NCBI GenBank assembly: GCA_965285935.1
Contig: OZ260661.1
Span: 135,408,001-135,472,000, forward strand
From: Ophelia neglecta
Taxonomy: Eukaryota
Direction of reading: 5' to 3'
Length of the DNA: 64,000 nt
Both the position numbers and the translations under genes were made by a program. Shown here one piece after another: positions 163-52,410 of the stretch. The stretch's first letter is position 1. The number at the start of each line of letters is the position of its first letter. A model generated the notes under the pieces. That model was not told the origin of the DNA and searched no databases. It was given only the letters and a program-made list of their open reading frames with translations.

Positions 163-1546
163 TTATTTCGACTTGTTCACGTTAGGGCCGTACGTAGTAT
201 TTTCAACCATAACGGTTGCGTCATGGTCGTCATCGCTTGTTTCATCATGGTCTTGGGTGGAGATAGTCCCCCTTTTTTTGTAGGGCACTCACTTCATCAT
301 CGATGTATAAATTAAGACTGTGACCACTCTTCCTTGATATTGACTCACTTGATAGCCCTTCATATTGTGGACTGATTCTTCCTGTATGATCATTTGCGGC
401 TGGTTTTCCAGTGACAGAGTCGTTTCGTTTGTACGAAATGTGGCCCCCGGATCTCTTGAGTTGCTTGCAGAAATGACGTCATTGATCTCGGCTTCATGTT
501 GCGCTTCTCTTCGGTCAATTGCAGGACTTTGTGTACTTTTGGATGCCTTTCTTCCAGTGAAAAAAAAAGCTTGTTCAAGTAATCGTTTGAGCTATGATCA
601 AACGCGGAGGTGCAGAGGCTTTGCGGAGGCTGAGGTCATGGATATTTCTGAGTTTAAGCATAAATAAGTCAGCAAGGCTAGAATTAGAACTGAGGGTTGA
701 AATTAGGATTAGTGGATGGAGTTTGGGACCGGTTTAATAAGTCTAGTGCTCTGTTTTAATTTCAAGATTTACCTCCGCACAGCTCCGAGCCTCCGCTTTT
801 AATTAAAAGCCAGCATTTGGCCTTAACTGCATGAATACAAACCACCACGGTTAGACCATAATGAAGTCTTTACATATAACCCTTAAATATGTGAATTACA
901 TACCGACGGCGCCTTATAAAAATAACAATGAGAACCCCGCCTATAACCAGTAAAACGAAACACACGGTCCCTACTCCGATTGCAAGTATTAATATTTGAC
1001 CTGAACATTTAAAATAATCGGACAATTTCTTTTATATTCACACGCACAAGATTAGTATCATGATTATCATGTTCTAATTTTTCAAGAAGTAATACCTCTT
1101 TCACAAATGTAGTATAGTGGCCGAATTCGTTGGCAACGAGATACGTTCAAACATAAAATCATAGCAATACACTGAATTGATACACCGGCAAAGCGGTTGG
1201 TGTGTCCATGCCATCAAGGGGTTCTCAAAAACAATCCGGCCATACTGGCTCAGCAATGATGGAATGCCGGAATTTGTGTCGTCGTCTAAAAGTTCAATCC
1301 AAACTTCACACTTGTTCAGAATATTCTTTGTACACGTGTTCGCAGTATTGATTCTAGGACTGTAAATAGTCAATGTGCCAAATTAAAAACATAAACATAG
1401 CATTACGATATGTACATGCAAGATATAATATTGATTGGCGTTGTTAACTGGAACTATGTATATGCCGTTCTCCATGACTTCTCCATGACCAGAAGCGATA
1501 TAATCCAATATATTGATCTCGGATAAATAACAAATATTTATCTCGG
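163..1546 (-). pseudogene. CLR0: decayed C-type lectin transmembrane receptor paralog
   Basis: Intact TM exon 1000-904 (GQILILAIGVGTVCFVLLVIGGVLIVIFIRRRR; AG/GT sites, same phases as paralogs). Frameshifted CTLD-b exon 1359-1096 (..NKCEVWIEL.., and ..YYICERG| in another frame). Possible CTLD-a remnant ~1546-1416 (NICYLSE..). Tail ~550-163 is split across three frames (YEGL, DYLHP, TVMVENTTY, stop 163-165). No signal exon identified. Confidence 0.7.
591..810. mobile_element. Degenerate MITE-like element in a CLR0 intron
   Basis: Imperfect terminal inverted repeats: gcggaggtgcagaggctttgcggagg (~604-629) versus cctccgcacagctccgagcctccgc (~771-797). Confidence 0.45.
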
Positions 1547-3279
1547 CTACAATATAATGTAATGCCAACAAAACAGGGTTGTGTGAAGCACGAAAGCGCT
1601 TAACCTATATACGATCAATTGTAATGAAAAAATAACTGGATAATATATATATAAATATATACTCTTTGTTGTCAGTGATAGCTATTTATTGGCAGACCTT
1701 CACTTGTATCAAGCAGATTGTCAGTTTGTAATATTTTTTGTTAGGTAGTTGCATAAACAAATGCGTTGAAAGGATATTGATTACGGATTACATTGTAAGT
1801 TCCATCACGAAAAATTCATCATATGTAAATTGCATCTATTTATGTAGAAAATTGCAATTTGCGCGTAACCAAGGAGGGAACAGCCTCGCATACTGTTGCG
1901 TTGTTCTACAGAATGATATGTTAGTTGTAGGAAACACCATTATGATCGTTCTGCCTCGTAGGCTGCTTTTCTTGATTAGGTGTACAGATCTCCAGTGGAA
2001 ATATCAGAAACTTAAGTGGGTCTTTCTTCTCTGCTTCTCCTTATTCTCTGCTTAATCGGAATTAAACAAAAATCGCCTTCCTTTGTAGCAGAGCCGACCA
2101 TTGTCTAAAATGAAAAAAAGTCAATAGCGATGATATTATCACATTCTCTTTGCTAGTCATGTGATGGTCGTTGAAATAAGTTACAGTCGAAGTCGTCCCA
2201 GGTTTTTCACATATACTCACATAATCCTTTTGTTTACTTCAGGACTCCTGGCCTATATAAAAACTTCTGCCTGATTTTAAATGGAGACACGTAGCCCTGG
2301 TGTCTTATTACTGACCCCGGAATACGTAATATGCAGGTAAAACAGGCATTTTTTCAAATTAACTGATAAATATTCCACGAATTTATTTAAATATAACATT
2401 TGAAATACGATCGACGAATCTCCTTTAGATTGCTAGCGCTTGGGTGCTAGTTACCAATGTTTTAACGCCCAAGCAGTAAAAGACTGCAATGAATTCGAGT
2501 GATCAATTCCCCTAATCTTAGGGGGCATGTGAATCTGCTTCACACTGATATAACAACATATGGTGCAGACATAAGTGTTCAGTCATAATATAAGCGTGAT
2601 TGGTTCAGTTTAATTAATTTACAACTTACATCACTGTCTAGGACATTTATTACCCTTTCATATTCAATGTACAATGACCTTTTACACCCTTATCTTGCGT
2701 TAATCGGAGGTTGAGGTTTTTCCTTACAATTGTCCCGACGAGCTGCTCATTCACCATTATTGGTTGGCCTTTTTTTAAAAATGGACCATTATCCATTAAA
2801 GCCAGATCCAGCCGTTTGGTTAATCAATAACCCTCCAATCCAAACACCACTTTTTGTCGGGTCAATCTAGTTAATCGCCTAAAACAAAGAAAATCTCAGA
2901 AAAATCATCTAAACTTAACGCGAAAAGGGAGTGGTTGCCCGGCTAATATCATAACTCAAGACATTGGCCTTTGTCGCCCTAGGTTGTAGCGAATTTTATT
3001 TTAGTTTCCAGTTTGGCCTAGGCGCAGTTTATCATAGACTTCTTAGTATGAACTATAATACGTTATACGTTAATATCCATATTTCAAAATAATTAGTAAG
3101 AAATTAGATCCAATTTGGGCTCATTACGGGTGAGGAAAATGTGCCTTAAGTACGTGTGTGTTGTGTTGGTGTTGTGTGTGCAAGTGTATATACTCCCGGT
3201 CCGTGGGATGGGGCCCGGCGTCTCGATCCAGCCTGGACACTGGGCAGTACTGTCAGCCAGAGTCCACTCTCGGCGGCCT

Positions 3280-3351
3280 GCAGTAGGAAACAGGCTCGGT
3301 TAAAGTCACAGTTAATGAGCTGTGACTTTAACCGAGCCTGTTTCCTACTGC
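3280..3351. repeat. Perfect 32-bp inverted repeat (hairpin) with 8-nt loop
   Basis: gcagtaggaaacaggctcggttaaagtcacag - ttaatgag - ctgtgactttaaccgagcctgtttcctactgc. Confidence 0.9.
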
Positions 3352-6082: not shown

Positions 6083-9000
6083 TCAATAAAGATGATGCGG
6101 CTTAAATTCCCTATTGGTCTGACCGTCAGGTTCTTCATCATCGTCATAAACACCGTTCGTATTGCCCTTATTGGCTAATGCATCTTTACGTTTGAACTTG
6201 TTCATTACTTTGAACCAAATTTTGGGGTGCCTTTGTCTTGATGCATAACTGTATTCTATGTCACTGTTTTCATTGTTTTGCTCCGTTTCCACTGGTTTTA
6301 CACGTGGAATATTCACGTAGTCTGCGCTATGTTGTATACGTTCCGCTGGTTTTTGTTGTCGGGTATTGACATAGCCAGCATTATGGTTACTGACTGGGGT
6401 GATTTCAATAGGTTGTGGACTAGCTGTATTGACGTAGCTTTCCTGTATAAAGCCACCCCAACTTTGAGCGACTTCCTGTGAATACACCGGGAAGTCGTCT
6501 GGAGTTGATCTACTCATGGTGCTAATTTGACCGAGAGCCAGAGCATCATTAATAACTTTATCTGCTGCTTGCTTGGCTTTCCTGAAAATAATTGAACAGT
6601 TTAACTGTCAAACTTTAGACAAATTGAACTATTTTTTATAATTAGGAAATAAACAGGCCCACGTATACCCTCCATTTTTTAAAATTACTACTCTCATAGC
6701 TTACATGAATTCAATGGTGTAGACGATATAGTTGAAACACAATTGATGATAAAATTAAAAAAGCAATAAAATTCTAACCTAAAGTGAGATTACTCTTCGA
6801 TAAGCGTTTCGTTTTTTGTAAAATCCAAAAAAATGAAAATAAATATGTTTAAACCAAGATTCTAACCTTTTTCTCCATATTACCACAACTAAAACAATAA
6901 TGGCGGCTGTGAAAAGTAAGGCCAGCGACACTCCGACAGCGATGTATGTCGTGCCTACAACAAGACAAACTAAGAAGTAAATAGCACATTTGTTATTTGA
7001 TAACTGCTTAATGAGTGAATCAAGCTCAATGAAGCTAGTTATTGGTTATCAATCAGCCAGATTTTTTGGCTGTTACCCAAAGTAATAAGAAAAGTTGTGA
7101 TTTATAAGAACACTGGAAAAACGAGAAGGAATTAAGATCATATCCTTTGTCTTGACCGACCCCTTCCGCATCCCCAAATCCAAAAATCAAGTAAACATCG
7201 CTTAGATTATAAAGCTGAATTCGGATTAATATATTGTATATAAAAGCCTATAGGAGTACAATGGGATGTCATTTACTTACCATTATTTTGACCGCCAGTG
7301 TTTGCCAACGTTGTTATAGTTTGCGTCGAACTAGGGACTAGTGTTGTTGGATATGTATTGGGACCTAAAACATATATTGCACATAACTGGTTGTAAACTA
7401 TTATATATTCTTAAAACAAAAGATGTGAGTTGTTGCAAGTAATATAAACGATTTGGCATCACATCGTGGGGAAAAGAAGATGAATGCTACCATGTTTCCT
7501 AACCCCTCGACCTCCAAGAAAATGCGCTATTATTTCGTTGAAAAAGAAAAAAACATGACGACTGAATATACCACAAAGTTAATACCAAAATGTCAATCAG
7601 ATGGCTTTTTATGCCAACCATACAAAACATACTCTAATAAACGAATGTAACGACCCTTACGGGCATTTACATGTGAAGTTAAAGGGCACTACAGTTGTGA
7701 CAGAAAAAATCATACGTAGTTATCTTGCTTACCACTATAGGGAGGTCTCGTGCTTTCCACCGAGGTACTTCTAGTAGTTTTTTTGCTAGTCGAATATGGA
7801 GGAACTATGCTCCGTAACGGGGTCTGCGAGGGTTGTGTGGAGACAAATTCTGGTGTTGTAAACCGGTTTATGGTTCGTCTGGGGGGATTGGTAACTATCC
7901 TTGACGTTGGACGGACAACTGTGTAAATAATACATGACAAATGATTGTATTATTATTTTGAGGTAACATAGAACATATATATAAGTATTATATCAAAAAT
8001 TTAGTTTTTATACAAAATCAAGACTTATTTACAAACCAATCGAGAATTTATTGCATGTAGTATGGTAATGTTGACGGTATGATTTCTATTTACCGTTTTG
8101 TTCGCAAATATATCTCAAGCTCGTGCCGTGTGCCTGGCCATACCAAAATCCAGCTAATGACATGGCGACATGGCCGAGGTTTTGTCCCGGCTCGGGATGA
8201 TTTATACTGTCGCCATTGAACCAGTTCATCCAGGAGTATGCTGATCCATCTAGCCACTCATAGCCCTTCCGGCGTAATAAAACGTCTTCAGTAAAGACGA
8301 GATGATCCAGATTGGTCAGTCCTATCCAGAACATGTTCTCATTGGTACAGGATATGTCTCCCGAAGAACACACGGAAGGACTGAAATATTAATTTAAAAA
8401 ACCTTTGCTAACGTTAGCCATTAACAATAAGCATTGGAGAATAAAAAGTTGGGTAAGACGCTTTTCTATGACCTCACAATTCTCTTTTTCGAAGTGAATG
8501 TCAATCATATAAACACATAGCATATAATACCTTATTTTTTTTATAAGGGTGCACACTTAGATAAATGGCGTGTTGAATGGGGGGGGGGTTGCCCTAGAAA
8601 AATTATGTTATGGGCTGTTATAGGATGAAAAACTGTAAACATAACCAAAATTCTCGAGATATGACTATTGTGTATTACACTGTGTGTGGTTAATAGGAAT
8701 ACTTGGAGGAATTAGTTTCGCGTCTACCAACTCCATATTCCAATCCTTTTATAATATATATACTTACATTGCACCAATGATTTGGTTAGTTTCTTCATTG
8801 GACGTGACAGAAACCAGTCTTGCCCTAAGCTGTCCACACTGTGCCGAAGAATCGTCCCAGTCCCGGAGATCTTCCCTCTCGGATATAAAATAACACCTGT
8901 TATTGCTATACATCCACAGCCCTGACGAGGGACATTGGCCCCACACACCTGCACACGAAGAAGATAACACGTCTCATTATAAGATACTTGTTCAACCCCA

Positions 9001-9838
9001 AGGCTAATGTCTTATTATAAAATATACATTTACTTTAGTAACTCTAATAAACTCAATTCAAAAAGGGTTGGAATGTCTAAAATATTATAATTATCGTAGA
9101 AACATTCTGTTTTAAAGCACTCTCCGAAGGACGCAAACATCTATACATAATTTATCATTTTTAATGTATACTGTATAGATAAGTTTAAACTTTAAATGCA
9201 TATTCATAAATAGATAATTAAATTATATTAAATTGAATACTCTGGAAAGACCGGCCTACATTGCAGGTAGTATGTGAGGCTTGCCTGCCGAATATTGGAC
9301 TTTTCCCCGGTTCTTTGTCTTTAATTGAGTAATATCCATAATTACTTATGAAATTGTAAATACAAACAAATCCTGGAATATTTCACACTTATATGTGTAC
9401 GAGTTCAGTGCAACCCCGCCACGTAGAGAATTGTATATATGTGTCTTAGACTGTTGATTCGTTACATGCCCGGCAAACCTTAACAAGGAGTCAAGGCACT
9501 TTGGAATCACGTGCAACCGAAAAAGTGTAACTGACATTTAGATTACATTGGCCGATACTTCAGTATTATAGACTATGTCATATATGCAGCAAGTGGTTTC
9601 TACTCCGCCAGACCTCTGCCTTCGAAAAGCCGAAAACAAGCAGCTTAACAACATCCTTAGGCGCAATGCCCGATACCAAGAACAACTACCTTAAGTGTCC
9701 AGCTAATGTAGGCACAAGCACCATTACTAATGTATACATTTTCATCGAGTTCATTATGTAAATACATCCAATAATGTATTATAGCATACCTGATAATACT
9801 GCTGCACATATGAACACCGCCCCTGTCCTGTCTAGCAT
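6083..9838 (-). CDS. CLR1: type I membrane C-type lectin domain receptor (~457 aa, 7 exons) with a tail carrying three YVN motifs
   Basis: Exons 9838-9790 (signal MLDRTGAVFICAAVLSG), 8948-8768 and 8380-8094 (CTLD: CYFISE..WIGL..WLDGS..RYICE), 7918-7733 and 7364-7281 (S/T/P stalk), 6954-6867 (TM YIAVGVSLALLFTAAIIVLVVVIW-RKR), 6581-6083 (tail). All GT-AG; 1374 nt open frame. Confidence 0.88.
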
Positions 9839-12192: not shown

Positions 12193-14623
12193 CTAGCTTG
12201 TCATATATAAGGTGTTTTCCACAACAGTTGTTTCCTCGTCATCGTTCTCACACTGTTCAGCTGGCATTTCCGTGAGCACTGCGTATACGTGGCTTTCTGA
12301 TTCCAGTTCAGCGGTGCTTCCATTGGGATGATTTATATATGTGTTATCGGTAATTGGAGATAGGCCATTGCCAACAGTAGCATAGGCTGTCTCAGCACCC
12401 TGTGAAGGCGCTATTGGCCCAATCACGTTTTGATAGTACACTGCGTCACCCTCCATATGTCCACGTATTGTTTCATCACAATAAATTGGGTTGTTGCCAG
12501 CTGTATCTTGATGGTAAATGTTTTCTGTCGTTCCTGTTGGCTTGAGGTTTGAGCTACACAGTGAACATCTGAAGAAACAATAATTCACGTGATCATGGCA
12601 TATCATCATTGATTTTGGGAAATGTATATCCATATACCTAATTTATCATGTAATGGTTATCGTTATAGGTAAATTATTATATAAGATCTCATTTATTTAG
12701 CTACCACACTTCACCATATCTTACCTTCGTCTTATGATTAACACTGCTACTATGACGGCTGATCCTAGAACAAACAAACTTGCAACACCGACACCTATGC
12801 CAATGTTTCTTCCTACGACAAAAATGCCAAGACGATTTAGTTAGTTTCAACTTATTTGGAAATTGATTGCTATATATCAATACTGTTCTTCTAGGGGATT
12901 AATATTCGCTTCCACTGGGTTTGATATGATACTATACGTCATATAGGCGTCTAATCACCTGAATCTGCCATCGTCATGGGTTCGGTATTGTTTAGACCGA
13001 CGGTGTACACTGTGGATCGCATGGCAATATATTCAGTAGTAAATGACAATGTGGTTGGCTCTGCAGCACCAGACATCTGACTTGTTGCGTTGCCCTCAGT
13101 AATTAAACGAGCTGGATGAAATAAATAGTGAGGTGTAATATTTGCACTTTATTGGTAAATCTCTGAACCTTTAAGTACATTAGATTTACATCAAGAAAAT
13201 TGACATGCAGCAAGCCACACATTAGCTTACCCGGTTTTTCACATATAGAGGGGCGCTGATCGTTTCGCTTTCTGCTATACCAATATCCGGTTGTACCTCC
13301 CATTGAGGCGTAACATTCCGAACGATCCGGTTCGGTGAATGCGTTATCATTACGCCAGTTATACCAGGTATAAGTTGTTCCGTCTAACCATGTCCAACCT
13401 GTCTTCCTGTGCCGTCACTGCCAGCTATGGCATGACCGGTTACTTATGAGTCCAATCCAAAGGACCGACGAAAGGTCATTCCTTACAATTACAAATGCAA
13501 GTATTGATATATGATCCGTTTGTACACAATATATTATATATGATATATGATATATATATATATATATATATATCTAGATTATAGCATTTACAAAAATTGT
13601 CAAGGCTTAGAGCCAAAATATTCCATAACCTTAAAGTAATACATAGGGCATCACAGGCATCATATGATTTAAGTTTATGACCCCCCCACCCCCCCATAAT
13701 TAATAAAACAAATTGGATGACAGTGAAATTTTGCTTGACCTGCAAAGCCGTGCTTAATGTTTTATGGTATACAACTACTTTCCCCAATTGAGGCAGATAT
13801 CCGAAAGCTGTGAAAGCTGAACAGTTGAAACTTGCTAAGAATAATGGTGTTTATAAGTCATCATTTCTTCAAAAATTATGAATGTACATGGGTTTCCTGA
13901 CATGTCTCTCACTTACTTAAACCGGTAGAGAAGAAACACGTACTTTAAAACCACATTTGAGTTTCACAACGCCATTCCTACACACATAATTATATAATTG
14001 TAAATTGTTATATTTAAAAAAAATAGGAAAGTACAGCTGATCCAACAAGAAGGCAGTCTCGTCCATATTTCCCACTGAAACAAGTGTAGCATCCATAGAT
14101 AAACACGCTTGTTTAGCCAAGTCGAATGTTTTATTGTCCAAATCCACAAGGTAACAATGATGATTATAGAGCTTCCACCCATCATCACAGTGTTGTGTCA
14201 AACCTGCAAAGAAATTAATACAACACTCAGGTAGTCATTGCATGATTTATTTCGGTCGGGGAAAATGGCGAAACAAGGAGAGTGTACGAGTAAAATCCAC
14301 TTGAACTTTCCTAGTATTAATGGGTGACATGTGATGACCAAAAGGCAACATCTTATTAATTAAATGGACATGGGTCTGACGTAGCCGCAAACTGTGGCTG
14401 ACTTGATAGTTTCTATTCTATTGTAAGCTTATGTAAACTTGTAGTGTACATTCGCATACAAGTTAGTATAGTTCTATTTGACATGTGATTACACCCTACC
14501 AATGATCAAAATATTAATAGATGCTCCCATAGCTTTATACACCAGCATTCAAAATGGACACCTACCTAAATTGCTGACCATTAAAGCGACCATTATCAAA
14601 AACAGTATCAGTGATTCATACAT
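12193..14623 (-). pseudogene. CLR2: CTLD receptor with in-frame TGA in the lectin exon (pseudogene, or lectin-less ~224-aa isoform)
   Basis: Exons 14623-14566 (signal), 14203-14035 and 13481-13231 (CTLD, with TGA at 13417-13415 in ..SCHSWQ*RHRKTGWTWLDG..), 13111-12959 (stalk), 12812-12725 (TM), 12568-12193 (tail: NPIY, YQNV, TAYATV, VYAVL, VVENTLY). The rest of the frame is intact. Confidence 0.8.

Positions 14624-14912: not shown

Positions 14913-14914
<2 letters not shown>

Positions 14915-14968
<54 letters not shown>
14915..14968. repeat. (AG)27 microsatellite upstream of CLR2
   Basis: Uninterrupted AG dinucleotide run. Confidence 0.95.
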
Positions 14969-14972
<4 letters not shown>

Positions 14973-16210: not shown

Positions 16211-18887
16211 TTATTCAGTCATTATGTTCTTGTATAAAGTATTTTCCACAAAAGTTGTTTCCTCGTTTCCACACTGCTCAGCTGGCATTTTCGTCATTCT
16301 TGGCACTGCGTATACGTTGCTGTCTGATTCCAGTACAGAAGTGCTCGCATTGCGATTATTAACATATACGATATCTGTAGTAGGAGATGGTCCATCGCCA
16401 ACAGTCGCGTAGGCTGACTCAGCAATCTGTGATGGACCTACTGACCCAATCACATTTTCATAGTACAATGTGTCACCCTGCTTTCTTCCACTTATTGTTT
16501 CATCAAAATATATTGGGTTGTTTCCAGCCGCATCTTGTTGGTTATAGTTTTCTGTCGTTTCCTTTGGCTTAGGATTTGCGTCAAACTGTGAACGTCTGGA
16601 GAAAACAATGATAAGAGAGAAACACGTGATTATTCTGAATAGACACATGTTCAGGAGTTTAAATGTTAAGAGGGCCATTTCTATTCAATGCCTAAAAAAA
16701 CCACCGTAAAGGACTGGTACTCTCCTGGAACGAATATCCCGCGGACTAGACTTAGCAACCCTAAGCGCAACACAGAAGTCCGCCGGTGTTTAAACAATAG
16801 CATTTTAGATCCGTCGGTGCAGAAATCACACTATTATGGGGATTTGGTCTACAAATCTTTGGTTATTAATACCCCTGATCACAAAATACATAGGATTTAA
16901 AGTTGGAAGGACCTTTCAGCCAGGGGGACTTTTTAATCTTATACACTGAGTCCGTTTCTATTCAATACACAGAGAAACCGAGTCATAATACCTTAAAACT
17001 TACTGTCATGACTAGGGTCGTGGGAAAAGGTCAGAGCATTGATTCGAATTCATTGTTATACATGTTCTAGTCGTTTTACACAGTTTTCAACTAACCATTA
17101 GTTCAGACACAAATTGATGTTCGGACATTATATGCATATTCATATATATAATATATAATACTTTAACTATAATTATCATATTGTTAGCATATCTTTACAT
17201 GGATCATTTTAATATACGCACCACGCTTCCCCGTATCTTACCTTCGTCTCATCATTAACAGTACTATTATGACTGCTGTTGTAAGAACAAAGAAACAAGC
17301 AACACCCACACCTATACCGATGTTTCTTCCTAGGAGAAAGATGCAATAATTCTGTTAGTTATGTTCAAAATGCTAAAATTGCTGATTTTTATATAATACA
17401 TTTTTTCCCATTTGGTGATCTGTCGACTCCGCAGAGTTATGGTAAAATATTCCATATACACGTCTTATTACCTGATACTGCCATTGTCATATGTCCTGTA
17501 TTGTTTACACCACTGGTGTCCACTGTGGAACGCAGGCCAATATATTCAGTAGTAAATGACAATGTTGCCGGAATGTCTGCAGCACTTGACATCTGCCTGG
17601 TAGCGTTGACGTCAGAAACTAAACGACCTGGATAATAGGAATGGATAGCGAGTTCTATGTTTGGGATTCTTTGAAAATCTCTTTCACGATTAGTATGTTC
17701 CTTTGGCCATGTTCAAGAGAAGGTCACGCAGACGGCCATACGGATTATTACCGGGTTTTTACATATAGAATGACACTGGCCTGTTGTACCAATATCCGGT
17801 GGTATCTACAATTGCGATGTTACATTGCCTATGCTCCATCATTTTTCCATCTGACCATATCTACCTTTTTTTACTTTCTCCCAACGAAATTTGCAAAAAT
17901 TGCAGTCCCTCTTCCTTCATGCATTTCGGTTTGGCAACAATGTGAAAGAATTGTTCCAAAAATGTTCAGTTCAAGGCCAAATGTAGGCGCTTCATTACCG
18001 TCAATTAAACCCGCCTAGCTTTATCGCTCTAACGTGCTTGGCCAATAACATTTCGTAACTCTCATAGACTAAGCAGTAATTTTGTACAAAGTATGCCAAA
18101 GAAATTTCCCTGACCCAAAAACATAATTCAAATAAAATGTTTTCTGTGCGTCAAGTTGTTTTACAGCCATTTTTTGCTTTTTTCATTTCTTTATCAATTT
18201 GACCTTCAACATACACTCCTCTTATTAATTCAGGGCTGAACTGCCATATCAAAAGTACGAATGCATACATTGGATGTTATTATATATGTCAATATTGTTA
18301 GATTTCATCCATACGCTTATCAGTACATGGCCAGGCATGGACGTCGGATTCCTGTCGATTTTTGGGAACCGTACCTGTAATGTAGCAATAGGAAGTGAGC
18401 GCAAAGTAGTCACTACAAATAGTTTCCAGTTTCAGGCATACTTATAATGGCCTTATTGTTTCTGTGCATTGAGGCGTTGCTTAGCCAATACAAATTGACC
18501 CGGTGGCGTCGCGCCCAGCCGCGGTGGGGCTACCAGACAATCTTGTGTCCAAATTCATATGCCCCCTTTTTTCTGTGAATATGGTTGGGGCCAGAAACAA
18601 AACTAGACAACAAAAAGAAAGCCACAAGAAGAAAACTGTATCACGACCTGTTGTATCCGCAAAGCGTGTCTAACATGCGAGTTAGGCTATTTTTTACAAT
18701 GTTGTGATGAACGTGCTATCACGTTCACTACCGCATGATTTTGTCCATAATACTTATTATATACTACCGACCAACGATCAAAATATAGCCAGATTTCGCC
18801 GCCATCTTTATAACACAGTATACACCTACCGAAACTGGTCATCATTAAAGCCGCCAATATTATCGACAGTGTAAATGATTCATTCAT
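16211..18887 (-). CDS. CLR3: CLR2 paralog lacking the lectin domain; predicted 228-aa signal-stalk-TM-tyrosine-tail protein
   Basis: Exons 18887-18830 (signal MNESFTLSIILAALMMTSFG), 17627-17472 (stalk), 17329-17242 (TM), 16595-16211 (tail); 687 nt open frame with canonical GT-AG. Only a frameshifted 3' scrap of CTLD-b remains (~17830-17752, QCNIAIVDTTGYWY..); no recognisable CTLD-a exon. Confidence 0.7.
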
Positions 18888-20099: not shown

Positions 20100-20800
20100 G
20101 ACATATGCACTTTCGCTGATGAATGGATATTTGTGGTCAATAGCCTGACCGCCTATGTGTCCACGTCCATGTTAGACTTACTAGTAAAGCAAAATCGTCA
20201 TCTGCATGTGGTTCAGCTTTCAGTCAGTAGTCCCATTCATATTCAGCTTGATTTAACCAGTACCCGTCGTCCAACGTCGAATTACATGGTAAGTATAGGG
20301 CATGTTTCTTTGCAGTCCTAAGAAGAACAAAGTGCATCGACGCGACAAATAAATCATCGAGAATAATATGTTTAAAAAGTTCCTCCACTGGCGAATATGC
20401 TTTTTGTACCTCCTAAAATGTAAAAATCATTGAACAATTTCGGCCGGGCCAAAGCAGGTTTGCATACTTAGCCGACCATTCTAATTCAATGGGAATTTTC
20501 AGTTACATGTCGAATTACAGCTGCCTTATTTTAAATAATCATGCACAGAAAAACACACCGTCTGCAAGGTAACATATCAATAGACAAAACCATGCTTATG
20601 GGCAATACTTACGAATCTATTAAAGATTAGATACATTGGCTTTTGCAACTGAGCCAAGTGTCGCACTTAGTCTTTAATAGAACTGTTCTGCATCAATAAA
20701 AATTAAATTTATGATGAAAACACGATAACAATGGTTATCAAAGAAATCCCATACGTGTCTACAGTTACTACTTAAGGCTAAAATAAAGGAGATACAGACA
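20100..20800 (-). pseudogene. Decayed partial duplicate of the CLR4 lectin exons
   Basis: 20100-20350 aligns to the CLR4 CTLD-b exon (gtcgatgcac..ggactgcaaagaaac; tggttaaatcaagctgaatat) with stops. ~20760-20800 matches the start of CLR4 CTLD-a (acagttactacttaa.gcta). Confidence 0.7.
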
Positions 20801-21985
20801 CCAGAATAAAGACAATAAAAGTAAATCAGGCAAACTAACTTAACTGTTCATAGAGTAACTCTTTTGTCGCAATTTGTGATTTCGAATATATCAATGATGC
20901 AATGACTCACAACACCACTGCTACATGGGATATGTTATAATCTGTGTTTTGATTTGTGTTTCCTTTACATTCTGTAATATTTTACATAGGTAGCGCATTG
21001 TTTGTTTAAGTTGAATAATATGATGGATCCACGATGTTACTTTTATCATATTGTTACTGATCTAGGCCTGATTGTATTAATGATGCTGTCGAGAAGGATG
21101 ATCTGAATTATATTGTATTGAGAATATTTAGTCTGTGAATATTTGCCTTGAGCCGGTATTAAGCAGTTTCTTTTTTCAAATATTGGGTTCACTGGGTATA
21201 ACAGCGAAGTAAATGTCTGATTAACACAATGTTTCATTTTTGAAAGATATTGAGTGTAAAATCCAAATTTTCTTTGGATTATGCCAAATGTGCAACCAGT
21301 AATGTTGTTGTTCACATAATTGCAACTGATAATTCATGGCAGTGTGAATTAAGAAGGTTATCACAATCAAAGATTATTCTTATTCTTGAGCAATCATCCT
21401 TTTTTTTTTCTTGAGAAGTCATTCAATTGTGTAATTTAAATGAGACAATAAATCTAAAATGAGTCTTCATACTAATAAATAGTGCTGTTTCACGGGTTAA
21501 AGTCCTAAAGTTTCTTAATTGAGTATTCGACATATAATGTATCTAGACTTGCTAGGAAAACAATCGCGAAAGTCTTAGACATAAAGTCAAACATTAAAGG
21601 CCAGTATACATAATATCAGTCAAACTTTACTTTATTTTCATCAATACCCATGCCTTTCTCTGCTCGCAAAAATGTGAGACACTAATATTCATAATTATTT
21701 TATGCTACCAAAAAACATGTCGGACAATCGATCGCCTACATATATTTATTTGTGTTGACTATCTTCCATATCCAGTATACAACAAATAATTTTTAATAAT
21801 CTTACATTCTTAATCTTATGCTGAATGCTTGATTGGCACGGATGGTAATATGTAGTTAGCATAGTCGGGTTCAGTCTTCTTGACAAAACAAGTCTAAGCT
21901 AATTGTGATTTTATTGCTGATACTGCCATTACATAGTTACTGGATCGTTACTAACACTATTTGGCTGTATATTATGTATGACTAT

Positions 21986-24900
21986 CTAATGAGCGCTGTC
22001 ATACATGCTATTATCAACCATACTAGTTTCCTCTTCGTCGTGAACGCCACCCATCTGCGATGTGGAGCTCTGTTCTTTGAGTGTCCTTAAGTTCATATTC
22101 CTGCAAGCGGCACCACAAGCAATAAACGGTTCTTTGTTTGTTTCATATACAGTATTGTCAACCATGGTTGTTCCCACACTATCAGCTTTATTTTCTGAGT
22201 GAGCGATGTATGGAACTACATTAACCGAGTAATCATAGGGGTCGGAACCTTTAAGCTGTGTTTTCAGGTTCGTGTTTGTTACATCAAAAGTTAATACAGA
22301 GGTACAGGTATCATAAAAAGCTTCAGAAGTACAGACTGAGTTTTCTGATTTTGCCGATTCTCGATTTCTTGCCATATTGTCTCGATCGGATACTTTGTGT
22401 TCCTTTTCTAATGAAGCTGTTGGTTTACTTTGGTGTCCTGTTGGTTCTGAGCACCTACAGCATAAAATAGAAGTCTTGTCTAGTTTCATATAAAGGATAA
22501 ACTGTTTGTAGATGGTGTTGCTTTTGCCTTGTTTCTCTGTGATAAAAAAAAAAACATTGAAATTATTAACATTGAAGTTAACGTGGTCATCAATGAAACA
22601 CTATATATATGAAAAGGTAAAAGAGCTGCCAATGGAAACAATTCAGACAAATCATAATTGTTTACTATTTACTGTGGTAGTTCCGACATCTTCAGAAGCC
22701 CCGTTAATTTTATATCTTAAACGTGTCAAGTGACCCAAACCACAGTCTTTAACTTATTAAGCGCCACCCCGTGTACGATATGACTTTGTTCTCAAAACCA
22801 TATGAGAGAACCCTTTTAGGAAGATGCAATCATTATATCTGCTGATATATTGTTTTGTTGAAAATCCAACAGGGGTAATTTACCCATTGATTTATAAACT
22901 TTTATGATTATTCCAGGGTTAAAACTGAACATTCTGGACGACTGTATGATAATTTTGTACAAAACAAATGGAAAATGTTGGCTTTGTCCAACTTGATATC
23001 TGGTAACCAAGGCAACCAATATTCATATTGCTATTTTCATTTGTCTATCCGAAGCCTCTACACCTGAAGCATGTTACATGTAATCTAGAATCAGTTTCTG
23101 AACAATGGCCTTCTTGCGAACTGGCATGCTTTCTGTTATTCCAGATTCTGTTATGCAATGTTCTAAGGTTTCCAAAACTTTCTTCATAATGTCCCAAGGA
23201 AATGGGGGGGGGGGGGGCGGAGGAGCGGGATTGGTATCTGGCAAATTTGGAGCTAGGGACTATACATCGCCACCTTTAACCTATTAACATCATGAACTGC
23301 GGTGGTATTATACTTACATTTTATTTTATACAGTGTGCCAACAAAATTATTAATTCTAGACAAGGGTACCAAAACCTGAAAGATGAAGACCACGGATTCC
23401 CGTATGGGAAGCTCTGAATTATTTTACACATGGACTATTACATTATACTTTTAATTTTACCTTCGTCGTAGGACTCTTATTATAAGCGTAACACCTCCAA
23501 CTAAAAGTAGAAGAAAGCCGGCTGTACCTATGCCCATGCCAATGATCGTTCCTTGGTCTGTAATTATAGAGGCTTTAGTTTTAGTCGTCAAATGTACATT
23601 ATATCATATTTGTGGTCAGATTGAATCGATAAATATTAGGTATATAACGATATACAAATATGGCATTTACCAAAGTGCAGTGAATTATCATTTTTATTCA
23701 TATAGGAACCATCCGTCTTGGTGTCTGTCTTGACTGTTGACATTTCAAGGACGTCCGAAGAAGGTTTATAGGGACGATCTGTCACAGGCGGAGGGAGATC
23801 TGTTTAGGATGGATCTAATTCGTGAACGTTTCCATTTATATTACTAATGGTATTAACCGTAGTAGCACGATTGGTGTTGAATTCTTTTAAACGATACTCT
23901 TCATGCATATATTTGATGCTGAGGAACTCATTAATGTAATCAAGAAAGATTAAAAATCTTGACCACACGTGCCAACCTCGAAAACAAATCATTGACTTTA
24001 TTTGATATTAATGACCACGATTATTGGTTGATGAAGCCGATCCAGATTTATAATTGTGTGATAATTAAGTGAAACTAGTATAGAACAAAATTTTATTATA
24101 TCCAGGAAAATGTGTTTGCCTAACAGTATGATAAGTTTCAAACTAACTCGACTTGCTTACGACTTAAACATTCACATATTCGCAGCATGGCTTAGAAAAA
24201 AAACCTTTGGTAGGAACCTGGCTTCATAAAACAAATGGCTTGATGTATACAATCACGAATTTCAATGCAGGTCTGAGGGCCAGGAGTATCACTAATGAGT
24301 ATAAAAGACGGATTTATTCAAATATTTGAAATGAATATACCTAAGCTATACTTATGAATATTGGCTAAGAACCAGGTTGGTATAAAAGTAATGTTATGAA
24401 TAGTGTTGTTTATCGACCAAGCGACACACATATTCAATCGTTTATAAGTAAGCTTTTCCAAGGAGTTAAAAATCAACTGATTATCTGATTTCTATAATAA
24501 CTTGCTTAAAGAAGACAGCCGCTTTCTACTTCTGACTTTCTTGAAACTGTTTGTATTCCTTTAGTTTCGTGCCTCTTGCTGAAAAGCCAGCAGGAATCTA
24601 TAAGCAGTAAGCCAAACGTATTGATAACATTTTACTAAAGAATTTCAGAATAATAAATCGTTCACTGGCATATTCTTCGCTGACATATCTGGTAGTATTT
24701 CAATATTTAGCATTTGTATGACAACTGAATTATCAGTTATTGTTATATTCTGTAAATCCAAACAATATGTCTTCCAAATTTATCCTCATCTTTAATGAAA
24801 TTTCTCCTGAGATACTAAAAATATATAGGGGTAAGAATCCATAACTTACGCTAGCAATATTAAGCACACAAAGGTTAAATAAATTTCAGTAAAGTGTCTG

Positions 24901-48439: not shown

Positions 48440-51400
48440 ATGATTCCGTCTATACTTGGATTCCTTGCCCTAATTACAGGTAGATAAGAGTTTGCTTAGA
48501 TACATTTCCGATCAATCTTTCCATTGTATCATGTTTCGCTGGTTTGGGGGATACTGAGAATCCTTAAAAGTACTGCCGTGTATAATATTTTGGGCATATC
48601 TTTCTTCTTGGCAGTTTTCACTTTGTAAATAAAATGCCCGGAAATTTCAGCCTATAAGTGCACATCAAATTCTCTGTCTTTGTCTCTGTTCTCTGTCTCT
48701 GTCTCTCTTCGTATGACATTTCATACAATTTGGCAGTTTACAGAATACGAACATAACAAGCAAGTATAGCAATGCTCACTGTTAAGTCACCGGGAACTGC
48801 TTTAGTGATGCTGACTCAAAAAAAGAACTTTTGAATATAACCAGCCTCTAAGCTCAACATGAATTTCTGGCAATGCCACATCGTTCCTGTGTTGAATTGA
48901 TTTCATCATATTACATTTTGTAGTTGAATGTGATAATTGGAAAACTAACAAATCATTCTCGACTAGCTTCTTTGATTAAGTGTTGATTTCAGGTGCGGTG
49001 GCACAATGCAATACTGCTGTGAACTGGATACACTCCGATGAACATTGTTATTACATCTCCGAGCCTAACGATTTACAAAACTACACCGCCGCGCTTCACA
49101 CCTGTCGGCAGCTCGGGAGTTATCTATTATCACTCACAAGCCCAGAAGAAACTGACTTTATAATATACGATATGTGAGTGTCATCTTAAATAACTTTCAT
49201 TCCTTTATAGTTGAAATCCGCTTGACTTAATATTAATTTTGAGAATGCGCGTAGTCTGTTTAATCAGACAACGTAGTGATAGCGCGGGAGTTTACTATCA
49301 TCAGCCACCAGTCCAGAACTAACTTATTATGTGTGATTTGGGAGTGTAATTCGTTCATCTTTTGTATTCATTTGAAGACAGATTTATGTGAATTGCACAA
49401 AAATTCATTTGCTGGTCTAAGGGACGGACCATTCAATATCTGGGGGGGGGGGGGGGGGGGGCGACAATTTAAAAAAAAAAATTGTTTGTTTCTGGTTATG
49501 CATAAAAAAAATTGTTTGTTTCTGACTCTGGAAAAAATAAATTGTTTGTCTGATATTTTCTTTTAAAAAAATTGTTTGCATAAGCACTGATCCATTCTTC
49601 GATGGATTCTAAAAAAAGGTTGGCCTGACGGCCAAATAATGACTTAACACATAGGGTATACAAGTTTGATCAAGGCTAGGGAAAAAATATTTGACAGAGA
49701 TTTGTTAGAAAAAAAAATTGTTTGCTTTCCAGATAGGAAAAAATAAATTGTTTGTTTGTCCAAAGCTAGAAATTTTTTTGTTTCACTAGAAAATATTTTG
49801 TCGCCCCCCCCCCCCCCCCCCAAATATCTAATCGTGCGTCCCTAATTTCTAGTGATCCTTTATACTTTTCAAATCCATCTGGCTTAAAATTAAATTTGAG
49901 AGTACTTGTAGTCTGTTCATAAAACTTAGAAACGTATTTCTGTCGTTACGGCCTATGGTGTTGTTTTAATGAAATAAAACCACGTGTCGCGTTCTTACAG
50001 AATGGTTGAACAGAATAAATCGGCTATTTCATATAAACAGCCATTTAAATTTAACTTGGTAAAATATAATTACTAACTCAATTGGTAATCTTGATAAAAA
50101 AAAAACAGTTACAATTAAATTTAAATCAATTAACAGGTTGGATTGCAAGCAAGAGGGACACTGCAACCTTTACGACCCTAAATATCTCTTCTGGATCGGA
50201 CTCGGAAAATACACTCGCACGCCTCAGGATACTATAACCCGGAGGCGCGGCGGATGGACATGGCAGAGCGGAGAAATGTACAGCTGGCAGAACTGGTATC
50301 CCGAGCATCCGGGTCCGGATATAGAACACGGATTGTTGTATTACACCGGGCAATGGGCTGGCAAAACGGCAAATGATCAACTGAGATATATATGTGAGGG
50401 AAAGATAAATTGTAAGTTTTTATTAAACATATTGCTGTGCGGTCTATAGCCACTTTGTAAAATTCCAATATATTGCTCGCCATTACAATGACAATTTCTG
50501 GTTGGCAGCAATGGGTGTTTGGGTTTCCAGCATCGTCTGCAGCATACAATATTATATCAGTATGATGCAGCTGCACATGCCCCTAGCCCTACTATGATCG
50601 GGTTTGATCACTCAAAGCCAATTCAGTCTTTAACGGGTAGGTGCTAAAACAATGGTAACTAGAACCCACACATTTGGCAGTTAAGAATATATTGTTTAGA
50701 ACAGTTTGTCAACTGAGTTTAAACAGAGACAAAATCAACACGCGCACTCGCTGAGTTTGCCAGACGTTACCGTAGATGATATAGAACCCATAGATGCACA
50801 GAAGTGACTTAACTTTGTTAGCTTAGTTATCCTGCTGCATTATTTCTTTGAGACTACTATCATTTTCCCCGTTTCCCCGTGTACTTGTAATCATCATTGT
50901 GTGCCAAATTAAATCACAATTTCATAATCTATACATAAAACCAATTTACAATGAGAGGCGGTTCAATGGCTCATAAATCAATTCATTTCTATGTGAACCC
51001 TAATATATAAACTTGTTTACCCAAACCAAATTAAGCTTTTCAACCAGCTACAGATGCGTGCAAAAATGTGACTGACGGCTATATGTTTATATTATTTTTA
51101 TTATTAAGAACAAAGTTAAAATGTATTGTTGCCACAGATCATATACCAAATGCATCATGCCTAATCACAAAAAGGCATACATATAAACAATTGGGGCTAG
51201 ATAATTGAGCGTGTAGTATAAAATTCTGTTACAAAAAGAGGCAGAAGCCTATATGTCTCGCCACATTTAAACCAAATCAATGTTTCGTTATTTGTAGAGC
51301 AAGGTGCAGGGGGAAAAGTCGTATCATATACACACACAAATGTATAGACACACTAGTGATAGTATCAGGTCAAATTAGAATGAATAAATAAGCGTTACAG

Positions 51401-52410
51401 AAGAAATGTTAACAAAGACAGGGATCATTAGAAGCTTAGTTAGTCTATGAAGTATAATATAATAAGTGACACTTTGCTAATTTGAACAATTCTAATATGT
51501 TATGCACTATTATACAAGGACTATTGTCTGTGTTAACATTGCGTGTTTGATTTTCAGCTTCGTCATTTCCGGGTATCGATGGTCCTATCGATGGTCCGAC
51601 CACCGATTGGTATTCTCCATCCTCGCCACCAGCTGCCAACATGATCGTCCCAGCAGTGTTCAGCGGTAAGCGATACTTGTACTCCCCTTCAATGTACGGA
51701 TAAAAATCAAACTCATCAAAAATCTCATTTCTTTGTTACTTTCCTATATGCTTCAATTACATGAATAAATTGATATTTTTTATAAGGAAGGAAATGGTTT
51801 AAGTTAGTCTTATTAATTGACTTTCAGACCAAGCAATGAGCATTATTATCATCAGCGCCTCCGTTGGTCTGCCCATATTGTTAGTGGTGATGCTTGTTAC
51901 AATTGTTATATACCAAAAAGAAAGGTAAATTTCCCTATACATGTACATTTCTTTTGGTATAATTTAATTGTATCGTAATCTGCACATCGTAGAACGTTAA
52001 GAAAGAAGAAATGTGCTAAGATATTATGTTAGTGAAATAAAAACGGAGTAACCTAGAATAATTCAATTGTACATGTAACGTTGTAGATATTATCCCGGAT
52101 AATGGTACCGACAATTTCGTCTTCTTGTAGGAGGAAATTACACAATATTCGTCAACAAGGACCAGAATGTTTAGCTAGCCCTTACACTGAGCCTTGCGAC
52201 AATCAGGAGCCGGGGCCATCAGGCGTGACCAGTGAACGACAAAATAGCGTAAACAAGCTCCAAATGCCCGCAAATGACATGAATCCTCATGATCGCATTG
52301 GAAATTCTAGCCAAATGGCTGAACCTGTAAACGACGAATATGAGGAATTACGTGGTGTCCCAATGAGCAGCAATCGCAGTAGTATCTACCAGGGACTAGC
52401 TCCCGTTTAA
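48440..52410 (+). CDS. CLR6: type I membrane C-type lectin receptor (~326 aa, 6 exons) with an ITAM-like tail
   Basis: Exons 48440-48479 (signal), 48993-49173 and 50137-50411 (CTLD: HCYYISE..FWIGL..WQNW..RYICE), 51558-51665 (stalk), 51828-51924 (TM), 52131-52410 (tail ..DEYEEL-x12-YQGL); 981 nt open frame. Confidence 0.88.
49421..49842. mobile_element. PIF/Harbinger (Tourist-like) MITE in CLR6 intron 2
   Basis: TAA|gggacggaccattcaatatctggggg ... cccccaaatatctaatcgtgcgtccc|TAA: imperfect TIRs and a TAA target duplication. Confidence 0.75.

What the first reader, a model, noticed from the sequence alone, without database searches (positions are those of the whole stretch)
163..52410. Cluster of type I C-type lectin receptors with a menu of different tyrosine signalling tails around a TRAF3 gene
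Seen: at least 7 paralogs share exon phases (1,2,1,1,2) and fall into two subfamilies (CTLD-a exon of 181 nt in CLR1/6, 169 nt in CLR2/4/5). Their tails differ radically: three YVN (CLR1); NPxY + YxN + ITSM/ITIM-like (CLR2/3); double NxxY (CLR4); almost no Tyr (CLR5); ITAM-like (CLR6). Established: vertebrate paired immune receptors combine similar ectodomains with activating versus inhibitory Tyr tails, but the vertebrate NK-complex lectins are type II. Inference: this is an independently evolved invertebrate paired/diversified lectin-receptor complex undergoing birth-and-death, physically linked to an innate-immunity adaptor.
Basis: partly seen in the sequence, partly recalled or inferred. 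Interest (0 to 1): 0.85.

Follow-up and report, generated by a model that had tools for sequence, protein, structure and literature searches.

The report
Decaying lectin-receptor gene array beside TRAF3
A tandem array of membrane C-type-lectin receptor genes, three apparently intact and at least five decayed, flanks a TRAF3 gene in what is probably a bivalve mollusc. It is a real but fairly ordinary lineage-specific gene expansion, not a demonstrated paired-receptor system.

Summary
The array is real. Between 163 and 52410 I rebuilt eight receptor-like units. Each has a signal-peptide exon, a C-type lectin domain split over two exons, a Ser/Thr/Pro-rich stalk, a transmembrane exon and a tail exon. 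Splice sites are canonical and intron phases are 1,2,1,1,2. A true TRAF3 gene sits in the middle.

- Only CLR1, CLR5 (two lectin domains) and CLR6 read through. CLR0 and CLR2 carry in-frame stops, CLR3 has lost its lectin exons, CLR4 is one base out of frame, and a CLR4-like fragment is dead.
- The tails are not all unrelated. CLR0, CLR2, CLR3 and CLR4 share an acidic run followed by a hydrophobic-x-N-x-x-Y motif, very like the mannose receptor's FENTLY uptake signal.
- No two members combine similar ectodomains with opposite tails, and no tail has a TRAF-binding consensus.

Retroelement relatives point to a bivalve. Oyster membrane lectins that signal through a hemITAM are already published.

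Verdict: a birth-and-death array of type I lectin receptors, probably endocytic or signalling. It is a new member of a known kind and of moderate interest.

The parts
163..1000 (-). CLR0: transmembrane exon 904-1000 and tail exon 163-549. Decayed copy.
   Evidence: The open frame has a GVG-type hydrophobic segment followed by RRRR. The tail frame is interrupted by TGA at 289-291, yet it stays open for 41 more codons and keeps the acidic run + VENTTY motif at 190-207. No significant CTLD exon lies between 1.0 and 5.8 kb.
6083..9838 (-). CLR1, apparently intact. Exons: SP 9790-9838, CTLD-a 8768-8948 (181 nt), CTLD-b 8094-8380, stalk 7733-7918 and 7281-7364, TM 6867-6954, tail 6083-6581.
   Evidence: All borders are AG/GT, the phases are 1,2,1,1,1,2, and no exon contains a stop. 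The tail holds three YVN at 18-21 residue spacing.
12193..14623 (-). CLR2. Exons: SP 14566-14623, CTLD-a 14035-14203 (169 nt, donor gtactt), CTLD-b 13231-13481 with an in-frame stop at 13415-13417, stalk 12959-13111, TM 12725-12812, tail 12193-12568.
   Evidence: The tail motifs are NPIY, YQN, TAYATV, YIN, YAVL and VENTLY at 12205-12222.
16211..18887 (-). CLR3, a duplicate of CLR2 that has lost its CTLD exons. Exons: SP 18830-18887, stalk 17472-17627, TM 17242-17329, tail 16211-16595. A CTLD-b remnant lies at about 17740-17860.
   Evidence: Nucleotide identity to CLR2 is 70-79% over the SP, stalk, TM and tail regions but absent between them. The remnant contains a stop. The SP-to-stalk junction stays phase-compatible. 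dN/dS against CLR2 is 0.56, Fisher P=0.003.
20171..20847 (-). CLR4-like dead CTLD fragment (pseudo-exons a and b).
   Evidence: It is 69-70% identical in nucleotides to CLR4 at 26356-26950. The family HMM gives E=8e-8 for the first half, and the reading frame is broken by stops.
21986..27249 (-). CLR4. Exons: SP 27192-27249, CTLD-a 26767-26935 (169 nt), CTLD-b 26291-26531 (241 nt, out of frame), stalk 23671-23799, TM 23461-23557, tail 21986-22454.
   Evidence: The WIGL frame cannot be reached from the phase-2 CTLD-a donor. A T7 run at 26507-26513 lies between the acceptor and WIGL, so this is either a true frameshift or a homopolymer assembly error. The tail has two copies of the motif: VDNTVY at 22145-22162 and VDNSMY at 22001-22018.
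29881..35000 (-). CLR5, apparently intact, with two CTLD cassettes. Exons: SP 34943-35000, CTLD1 34238-34406 + 33032-33282, CTLD2 32754-32922 + 32348-32601, stalk 31192-31380, TM 30975-31071, tail 29881-30415.
   Evidence: All phases are compatible, and a 109-nt intron joins the two cassettes. Pfam Lectin_C scores 28.4 bits on CTLD2-b. The tail has 1 Tyr in 177 residues. Its last codons and stop run into a 31-bp minisatellite at 29724-29910.
36998..41503 (-). TRAF3 gene. Exons: MATH 36998-37552, coiled coil 37733-38083, zf-TRAF 38470-38646 and 38855-39103, RING 41180-41503.
   Evidence: Pfam MATH E=5e-49 and RING E=1e-8; zf-TRAF is weak. The best solved-structure matches are TRAF3, above TRAF5 and TRAF2. 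Named database relatives are TRAF3 proteins of many animal phyla.
48440..52410 (+). CLR6, apparently intact. Exons: SP candidate 48440-48479, CTLD-a 48993-49173 (181 nt), CTLD-b 50137-50411, stalk 51558-51665, TM 51828-51924, tail 52131-52410.
   Evidence: Pfam Lectin_C scores 25.0 bits. The tail ends in an acidic DEYEEL, then 12 residues, then SIYQGL (ITAM-like, P=0.002 by shuffling).

Best explanation
This is a lineage-specific tandem array of type I membrane C-type-lectin-like receptors in a non-vertebrate animal, probably a bivalve mollusc.

How it was built (shown from sequence):
- The array grew by repeated local duplication of a six-exon unit.
- The two-exon lectin cassette and the stalk exon each start and end in phase 1. 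Cassettes can therefore be doubled (CLR5) or lost (CLR3) without breaking the frame.
- The array is in active birth-and-death. CLR1, CLR5 and CLR6 read through. CLR0, CLR2, CLR3, CLR4 and one fragment are damaged.

How it probably works (inferred):
- The intact proteins sit in the plasma membrane of immune or epithelial cells. The lectin domain is held on a glycosylated stalk and binds microbial or self ligands. Binding is probably not through the canonical Ca2+/sugar site, because none has WND and only one domain has EPN.
- The 169-nt subfamily ancestrally carried an acidic run followed by a hydrophobic-x-N-x-x-Y signal near the C-terminus. This is the same logic as FENTLY in the mannose receptor and FxNPxY in the LDL receptor. 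It would recruit PTB-type clathrin adaptors for uptake.
- CLR1's three YVN sites would recruit a Grb2/Drk-type SH2 adaptor after phosphorylation.
- CLR6's acidic YEEL...YQGL would recruit a Syk-type kinase, as in the oyster CgCLec-HTM.
- The position next to TRAF3 is most likely incidental.
For: - Gene models with canonical splice sites and conserved phases.
- CTLD identity: Pfam; profiles of both exon halves against solved structures, with best hits to mannose-receptor-family CTLDs at E=1e-10 and 1e-40 summed over domains; the family HMM scan.
- Duplication history and decay.
- Purifying selection on CLR2/CLR3 non-lectin exons: dN/dS 0.56, P=0.003.
- Shared tail motif: 5 of 8 window-wide matches lie at tail C-termini, against 0.7 expected for the whole window; with the acidic run it is 5 of 5 against 0.07 expected.
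- FENTLY mediates clathrin-dependent internalisation of the mannose receptor (PMC8551360).
- Oyster membrane C-type lectins with a hemITAM signal through Syk-ERK (PMC13027682, PMC12842671).
- Taxon: the TRAF3 MATH tree places the window outside the jawed-vertebrate clade. All top named relatives of the inserted retroelement's reverse transcriptase are bivalve sequences.
Against: - There is no expression, protein or ligand data.
- No homologue of any tail or CTLD exon could be recovered from the protein collections, so conservation in orthologues is untested.
- Every copy that carries the endocytic-type motif is damaged in this assembly.
- The motif lies 100-150 residues from the membrane, not close to it as in the mannose receptor.
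- Single motifs are short and only modestly above chance.
- Tyrosines are not preferentially conserved between CLR2 and CLR3.
- The bivalve assignment rests on a mobile element.
Confidence: 0.6

Rival explanations
1. The array is an independently evolved paired or diversified immune-receptor complex, in which similar lectin ectodomains are coupled to activating or inhibitory tyrosine tails, and it is functionally tied to the neighbouring TRAF3 adaptor.
For: - Different tyrosine motifs occur on different members: YVN x3, an ITAM-like pair, and SxYxxV/TxYxxV.
- The family is tandemly arranged around TRAF3.
- Oyster precedents show that membrane C-type lectins can signal through Syk.
Against: - No pair has similar ectodomains and opposite tails. 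CLR2 and CLR3 share one tail type, and the other members are only about 30-52% identical in CTLD-b.
- No charged residue occurs in any transmembrane exon.
- The ITIM/ITSM-like sites lie only on a copy with a premature stop (CLR2) and a copy without a lectin domain (CLR3).
- No TRAF-binding consensus occurs in any tail.
- The TRAF3 3' flanks of three other animals lack such genes.
Confidence: 0.1
2. The genes are non-immune adhesion, cargo or matrix receptors, comparable to layilin, chondrolectin or CD302. They would be used in tissue organisation, feeding or shell biology, and the tyrosine motifs would serve only sorting and cytoskeletal links.
For: - The canonical sugar-binding residues are mostly missing. 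There is no WND, and EPN occurs in one domain only.
- The shared motif is an uptake or PTB type rather than an immune type.
- Type I single-CTLD proteins with such roles exist in vertebrates (my own knowledge).
Against: - Rapid duplication and decay with unrelated tails is typical of immune-type families.
- The closest described bivalve membrane C-type lectins act in haemocytes.
- No sequence relationship to layilin, chondrolectin or CD302 was detected. The best solved-structure matches are mannose-receptor-family CTLDs.
Confidence: 0.15
3. The array is essentially a gene graveyard. Few or none of the copies are functional in this genome, and the tail 'motifs' are chance or relic sequence without present function.
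For: - Five of eight units are visibly damaged.
- The CLR5 tail ends inside a minisatellite.
- No homologues were found in very large protein collections.
- Motif statistics are modest and tyrosines are not specially conserved.
Against: - CLR1, CLR5 and CLR6 keep 6 to 8 exons open with good splice sites.
- dN/dS between CLR2 and CLR3 is significantly below 1.
- The shared motif survives in four diverged tails.
- The stops could be recent or polymorphic, as in bivalve presence/absence variation.
Confidence: 0.15

Closest known systems
Oyster membrane C-type lectins CgCLec-HTM and CgCLec-TM1 (Crassostrea/Magallana gigas)
   Same: - These are bivalve haemocyte lectins with one CTLD, a transmembrane segment and a cytoplasmic YxxL (hemITAM) that couples to Syk-ERK and cytokine induction.
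- CgCLec-HTM has its transmembrane segment at the C-terminal side, like the genes here (PMC12842671, PMC13027682).
- The acidic DEYEEL of CLR6 fits the same logic.
   Different: - No sequence relationship could be tested, because no reference sequence was available to the tools.
- Here there is a whole array with several unrelated tails, a second YxxL in CLR6, and no canonical QPx/WHD-type sugar motif.
- No array with alternative tails turned up in the papers I read for the oyster genes.
Vertebrate mannose receptor family and CD302 (type I CTLD endocytic receptors)
   Same: - Both have type I topology.
- CTLDs of MRC1, MRC2, LY75, PLA2R and FcRY are the best solved-structure matches for both exon halves.
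- CLR2 and CLR3 tails contain VENTLY, against FENTLY, the clathrin uptake signal of the mannose receptor (PMC8551360).
   Different: - The genes here have no cysteine-rich or fibronectin type II domain.
- They have one or two CTLDs, not eight to ten.
- The motif lies at the far C-terminus of a 120-170-residue tail, not close to the membrane.
- The top ranks in the structure search partly reflect scores summed over many domains.
Vertebrate NK-complex and Dectin clusters of C-type lectin-like receptors (paired activating and inhibitory members)
   Same: Both are tandem clusters of CTLD receptors that evolve by birth-and-death, include pseudogenes, and carry tyrosine-based motifs (PMC1193534, PMC11624271).
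   Different: - The vertebrate receptors are type II.
- Their pairs have near-identical ectodomains with either an ITIM tail or a charged transmembrane residue.
- Neither feature is present here.
Bivalve C-type lectin gene expansions
   Same: Large, diversified, lineage-specific CTL repertoires that include transmembrane forms are documented across bivalves (PMC10140915).
   Different: That work catalogues domains and expression. It does not analyse cytoplasmic tails, exon phases or this locus.

Membership tests
[quoted passage not shown] | Significant match to the Lectin_C profile or to solved CTLDs | tested here: met
   Pfam Lectin_C scores 28.4 and 25.0 bits (cut-off 22.6) for two second-half exons; the others are below threshold as half-domains. 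Family profiles of both halves hit solved CTLDs at E=8e-11 and 1e-40.
[quoted passage not shown] | Core framework: N-terminal Cys pair, alpha-1 Cys, WIGL strand, C-terminal (I/V)CE Cys | tested here: met
   All are present in the six full copies. The usual Cys after the WND position is absent. An extra Cys after WIGL (169-nt subfamily) or an extra pair before WIGL (181-nt subfamily) takes its place.
Ca2+-dependent sugar-binding C-type lectins | EPN or QPD tripeptide together with WND | tested here: not met
   EPN occurs only in CLR5 CTLD2. CLR2 and CLR5 CTLD1 have EPD, CLR4 has EPQ, CLR1 has EPG, and CLR6 has none. The WND position reads WYG, WYS or WAG in all.
Type I membrane receptor | N-terminal signal peptide, one hydrophobic segment after the ectodomain, basic residues on the cytoplasmic side | tested here: met
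   The signal-peptide exons are 58 nt in four copies, 49 nt in CLR1 and 40 nt in CLR6. The transmembrane exons have about 20-23 uncharged residues followed by RRR, RK or HR. This is by exon order only. Predictors were not run on a joined protein, and there is no transcript evidence.
Paired activating/inhibitory immune receptors | Members with closely similar ectodomains but opposite signalling parts | tested here: not met
   The closest pair, CLR2/CLR3, shares one tail type. Members with different tails are about 30-52% identical in CTLD-b.
Paired activating/inhibitory immune receptors | Activating members have a short tail and a charged transmembrane residue for an ITAM adaptor | tested here: not met
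   No Asp, Glu, Lys or Arg lies inside any transmembrane segment, and all tails are 92-177 residues long.
ITIM/ITSM-bearing inhibitory receptors | (S/I/V/L)xYxx(I/V/L) or TxYxx(V/I) in the tail of a functional receptor, binding SHP-type phosphatases | tested here: inconclusive
   Consensus matches occur in CLR2 (2), CLR3 (3) and CLR6 (1), with shuffle P of 0.02-0.25. CLR2 and CLR3 are damaged copies. Phosphatase binding is not testable here.
ITAM / hemITAM receptors | YxxL/I-x6-8(to 12)-YxxL/I, or an acidic cluster followed by a single YxxL; Syk recruitment | tested here: inconclusive
   CLR6 has DEYEEL, then 12 residues, then YQGL. The spacer is at the upper limit (P=0.002 for the pair, 0.02 for acidic YxxL). 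Syk binding is not testable here.
Mannose receptor family (group VI C-type lectins) | Cysteine-rich domain, fibronectin type II domain and 8-10 CTLDs | tested here: not met
   Only a signal-peptide exon precedes the one or two CTLD cassettes. No other domain exons were found.
Mannose receptor family (group VI C-type lectins) | Cytoplasmic hydrophobic-x-N-x-x-Y uptake signal (FENTLY) | tested here: met
   VENTLY occurs in CLR2 and CLR3, VENTTY in CLR0, and VDNTVY and VDNSMY in CLR4, each after an acidic run. Function was not tested.
TRAF3 | RING, TRAF zinc fingers, coiled coil and C-terminal MATH domain, with TRAF3 as the best match | tested here: met

The most novel reading that the evidence does not exclude
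The three intact genes, perhaps with polymorphically intact alleles of the others, form a working invertebrate counterpart of the vertebrate Dectin/NK lectin clusters. Phase-symmetric exons let one lectin scaffold be recombined with alternative output modules: Grb2-type YVN repeats, an ITAM-like pair, a PTB/endocytic signal, or a tyrosine-free tail. The lectin-less CLR3 (signal peptide, stalk, membrane segment and full tail) would act as a decoy or signalling partner.
Probability: 0.15. Interest if true: 0.65.

Novelty: new member of a known kind. Interest (0 to 1): 0.35.

Why it matters
If the intact members are expressed on haemocytes, the locus offers a compact natural experiment in how an invertebrate couples one recognition fold to different intracellular outputs, and how quickly such genes are made and lost. 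An ENTLY-type uptake signal on mollusc type I lectin receptors would suggest either deep conservation or convergence with the vertebrate mannose receptor tail.

As it stands, it is one more lineage-specific C-type lectin expansion of the kind already catalogued in bivalves. Several copies are dead, and there is no functional link to TRAF3.

Tried and rejected
- **Tail homologues, unrestricted length.** I searched a profile of the CLR2+CLR3 tails against 1.84 billion representative proteins. The only hit was an unrelated repeat protein sharing a GDxxYYxN-like word. In hindsight these two copies are damaged and may not be annotated anywhere.
- **CTLD-b homologues.** A CTLD-b family profile in the 5.8-billion-protein search found nothing at E<=1e-5. 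The length window also excludes full-length receptors.
- **Exact look-up.** The TRAF3 MATH open frame is not on record, so this genome is probably not in the collection.
- **Synteny.** I fetched TRAF3 3' flanks from three other animals (L001, which groups with a clam in the tree, plus L002 and L003). No CLR exon lies within 7-10 kb. Walking further along the contigs was too costly.
- **Organism from TRAF3.** The best identity is only 71-73%, hits come from all phyla, and the tree is unresolved apart from excluding jawed vertebrates. The retroelement search was more informative.
- **CTLD exons for CLR0.** Short suggestive pieces at 1085-1213 and 2197-2238 are not significant.
- **TRAF-binding motifs in tails.** None were found.
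- **Preferential conservation of tyrosines.** It is not seen.
- **Rfam scan.** It found only a tRNA.
- I re-ran it by reference.
- I made no search, membrane or signal-peptide prediction, or structure prediction on a joined (spliced) protein. All protein work was done exon by exon.


Full report
**What the window is.** The window is AT-rich (GC about 0.38), has no gaps and has short introns. It is not human: the gene content is a lectin array around TRAF3.

A reverse-transcriptase element is inserted in the TRAF3 5' region. Its best named relatives are only bivalve sequences (Ostrea, Mercenaria, Dreissena, Mytilus, and a contaminated clam-symbiont bin) at 55-61% identity. A tree of the TRAF3 MATH exon puts the window outside a well-supported jawed-vertebrate clade but does not resolve the phylum.

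I therefore treat the source as a non-vertebrate animal, probably a bivalve mollusc. No close relative is present in the protein collections: TRAF3 MATH identity is at most 73%, and the exact open frame is not on record.

**Checking the observation.**
- Self-comparison with translated exons and with family HMMs finds six complete first-half and six complete second-half C-type lectin domain (CTLD) exons, plus remnants.
- I rebuilt each unit from open frames and splice sites.
- The common plan is: a signal-peptide exon (58 nt in CLR2, CLR3, CLR4 and CLR5; 49 nt in CLR1; a 40-nt candidate in CLR6), CTLD-a, CTLD-b, a Ser/Thr/Pro-rich stalk exon (two in CLR1), a transmembrane exon ending in basic residues, and one tail exon.
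- CTLD-a is 181 nt in CLR1 and CLR6, and 169 nt in CLR2, CLR4 and both cassettes of CLR5.
- The 181-nt pair also shares a four-residue insertion and a different cysteine pattern, so the two subfamilies are real.
- TRAF3 is unambiguous. Its MATH exon is 72% identical to human TRAF3 and scores above TRAF5 and TRAF2. RING, zinc-finger and coiled-coil exons lie upstream on the same strand.

- CLR2 has an in-frame stop in CTLD-b (13415-13417) and a degenerate CTLD-a donor, gtactt.
- CLR3 is a duplicate of CLR2, with 70-79% nucleotide identity over the signal-peptide, stalk, transmembrane and tail regions. Its CTLD exons are gone, and only about 87 nt of the CTLD-b end remains, with a stop in it.
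- The CLR4 CTLD-b exon is 241 nt. The other copies are 287, 251, 251, 254 and 275 nt, all 2 modulo 3. The WIGL frame therefore cannot be reached from the preceding exon. A run of seven T at 26507-26513 lies in between, so this is either a true frameshift or a homopolymer error.
- A CLR4-like pair of dead CTLD pseudo-exons lies at 20171-20847.
- CLR0, at the window edge, has a transmembrane and a tail exon only. A TGA at 289-291 interrupts the tail, and no significant CTLD lies upstream.
- Only CLR1, CLR5 and CLR6 read through every exon.
- CLR5 has two CTLD cassettes joined by a 109-nt phase-compatible intron.
- Birth-and-death evolution is thus strongly supported, but the 'menu' of tails is largely carried by dead or doubtful genes.

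**The tails are not all unrelated.**
- CLR0, CLR2, CLR3 and CLR4 (the last twice) end in an acidic run followed by hydrophobic-(E/D)-N-(T/S)-x-Y. The instances are VENTTY, VENTLY, VENTLY, VDNTVY and VDNSMY.
- The window's six-frame translation holds eight matches to this pattern and five of them are these. About 0.7 are expected for the whole window. With the acidic run, the count is five of five against 0.07 expected.
- The motif has the form of PTB-domain and clathrin uptake signals. It is almost the same as FENTLY, which drives clathrin-dependent internalisation of the mannose receptor (PMC8551360).
- Mannose-receptor-family CTLDs are also the best solved-structure matches of both exon halves. 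That ranking is inflated because scores are summed over their many domains.
- This makes an endocytic or phagocytic role at least as likely as ITIM/ITAM signalling for the 169-nt subfamily.

**How strong the motif evidence is.**
- By shuffling each tail, the notable items are three YxN in CLR1 (P=0.02), the YxxL pair in CLR6 (P=0.002) and the doubled motif in CLR4 (P=0.002). The ITIM/ITSM-like matches are weak (P 0.02-0.25). About 56 tests were made.
- Between CLR2 and CLR3, the signal-peptide, stalk, transmembrane and tail exons give dN/dS of 0.56 at dS 0.37, significantly below 1 (Fisher P=0.003). So there was selection on these parts after duplication.
- Tyrosine columns are no better conserved than the rest: 7 of 9 identical against 65% identity overall (P=0.32).

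**Testing the paired-receptor and TRAF3 ideas.**
- Paired receptors need near-identical ectodomains with opposite outputs, and usually a charged transmembrane residue in the activating partner.
- Here the only close pair has the same tail. Members with different tails are about 30-52% identical in CTLD-b. No transmembrane exon has a charged residue.
- No tail contains a TRAF2/3/5-binding consensus.
- In three other animals, one of which groups with a clam in the tree, the 7-10 kb downstream of the TRAF3 MATH exon holds no CLR exon.
- I therefore regard the adjacency to TRAF3 as unexplained and probably incidental.

**Ligand binding.** Only CLR5 CTLD2 has EPN, and none has WND; the position reads WYG, WYS or WAG. 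The canonical cysteine after that position is missing. Classical Ca2+-dependent sugar binding is therefore doubtful, although bivalve lectins with aberrant motifs do bind glycans (table in PMC12842671).

**Comparison with what is known.**
- Large lineage-specific C-type lectin expansions, including transmembrane forms, are documented in bivalves (PMC10140915).
- The oyster lectins CgCLec-TM1 and CgCLec-HTM have a hemITAM and signal through Syk-ERK to IL-17 and TNF. CgCLec-HTM has its transmembrane segment on the C-terminal side (PMC13027682, PMC12842671).
- The general kind is therefore known.
- What may be new is the genomic picture: one array, phase-symmetric cassettes, several tail types including an ENTLY-type signal, and a lectin-less derivative.

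**Limits.**
The CTLD-b profile search found nothing within its length window.
- I left out every step that needs a joined spliced protein: full-length homology search, topology predictors and structure prediction.

**Verdict.** This is a real, well-structured but largely decaying array of type I C-type-lectin-like receptor genes next to TRAF3. It is a new member of a known kind and of moderate interest.

Noticed in passing
window 41613-45885 (+): A reverse-transcriptase element (open frames 41979-43412, 43464-44483, 44558-44965) is flanked by 657-bp direct repeats that are 99% identical (41613-42269 and 45229-45885). It sits inside the 5' part of TRAF3. All its best named relatives are bivalve sequences.
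   Followed up: partly
window 46050-46304 and 46646-46808 (-): Degenerate second copies of the TRAF3 zf-TRAF exon and RING exon lie upstream of the retroelement. The RING copy is 74% identical in nucleotides to 41303-41455 and its zinc ligands are partly lost. This looks like a partial duplication of the TRAF3 5' end.
   Followed up: partly
window 16211-18887 (-): CLR3 keeps an open signal-peptide, stalk, transmembrane and full tail exon set with compatible phases, although its lectin exons are deleted. If it is spliced, it would encode a lectin-less membrane protein with the complete tyrosine-rich tail.
   Followed up: partly
window 29724-29910: A 31-bp minisatellite (5.4 copies, 97% matches) overlaps the last codons and the stop of the CLR5 tail exon. 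The present C-terminus of CLR5 may therefore be a replacement of the ancestral one.
   Followed up: partly
window 63388-64000 (+): A helicase-type P-loop exon (GETGSGKT) is followed by a 31-bp unit repeated about 16.7 times (63502-64000). The unit copies the end of that exon together with its splice donor.
   Followed up: partly
window 29479-29661 and 52697-52880: An 85% identical repeat lies just downstream of the stop codons of CLR5 and CLR6. It has the same absolute orientation in both places although the genes are on opposite strands, so it is probably a mobile-element fragment.
   Followed up: no
window 55424-55498 (-): A tRNA-Thr (anticodon TGT) gene, scoring 71 bits in Rfam.
   Followed up: yes
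window 3276-3355: A near-perfect hairpin (36-nt arms, 97% complementary, 8-nt loop) lies in the stretch where CLR0's lectin exons would be expected.
   Followed up: no
window 14915-14968 and 61264-61467: An (AG)27 microsatellite lies about 300 nt upstream of the CLR2 signal-peptide exon, and a 29-bp x 7 tandem repeat (98% matches) lies at 61264-61467.
   Followed up: no
transmembrane exons of CLR0, CLR1, CLR2, CLR3, CLR4 and CLR5: The membrane segments begin with a shared small-residue pattern (IGIGVGV, IAIGVGV, IGMGIGT, IAVGVS). This is a possible helix-packing or dimerisation motif. CLR6 lacks it.
   Followed up: no
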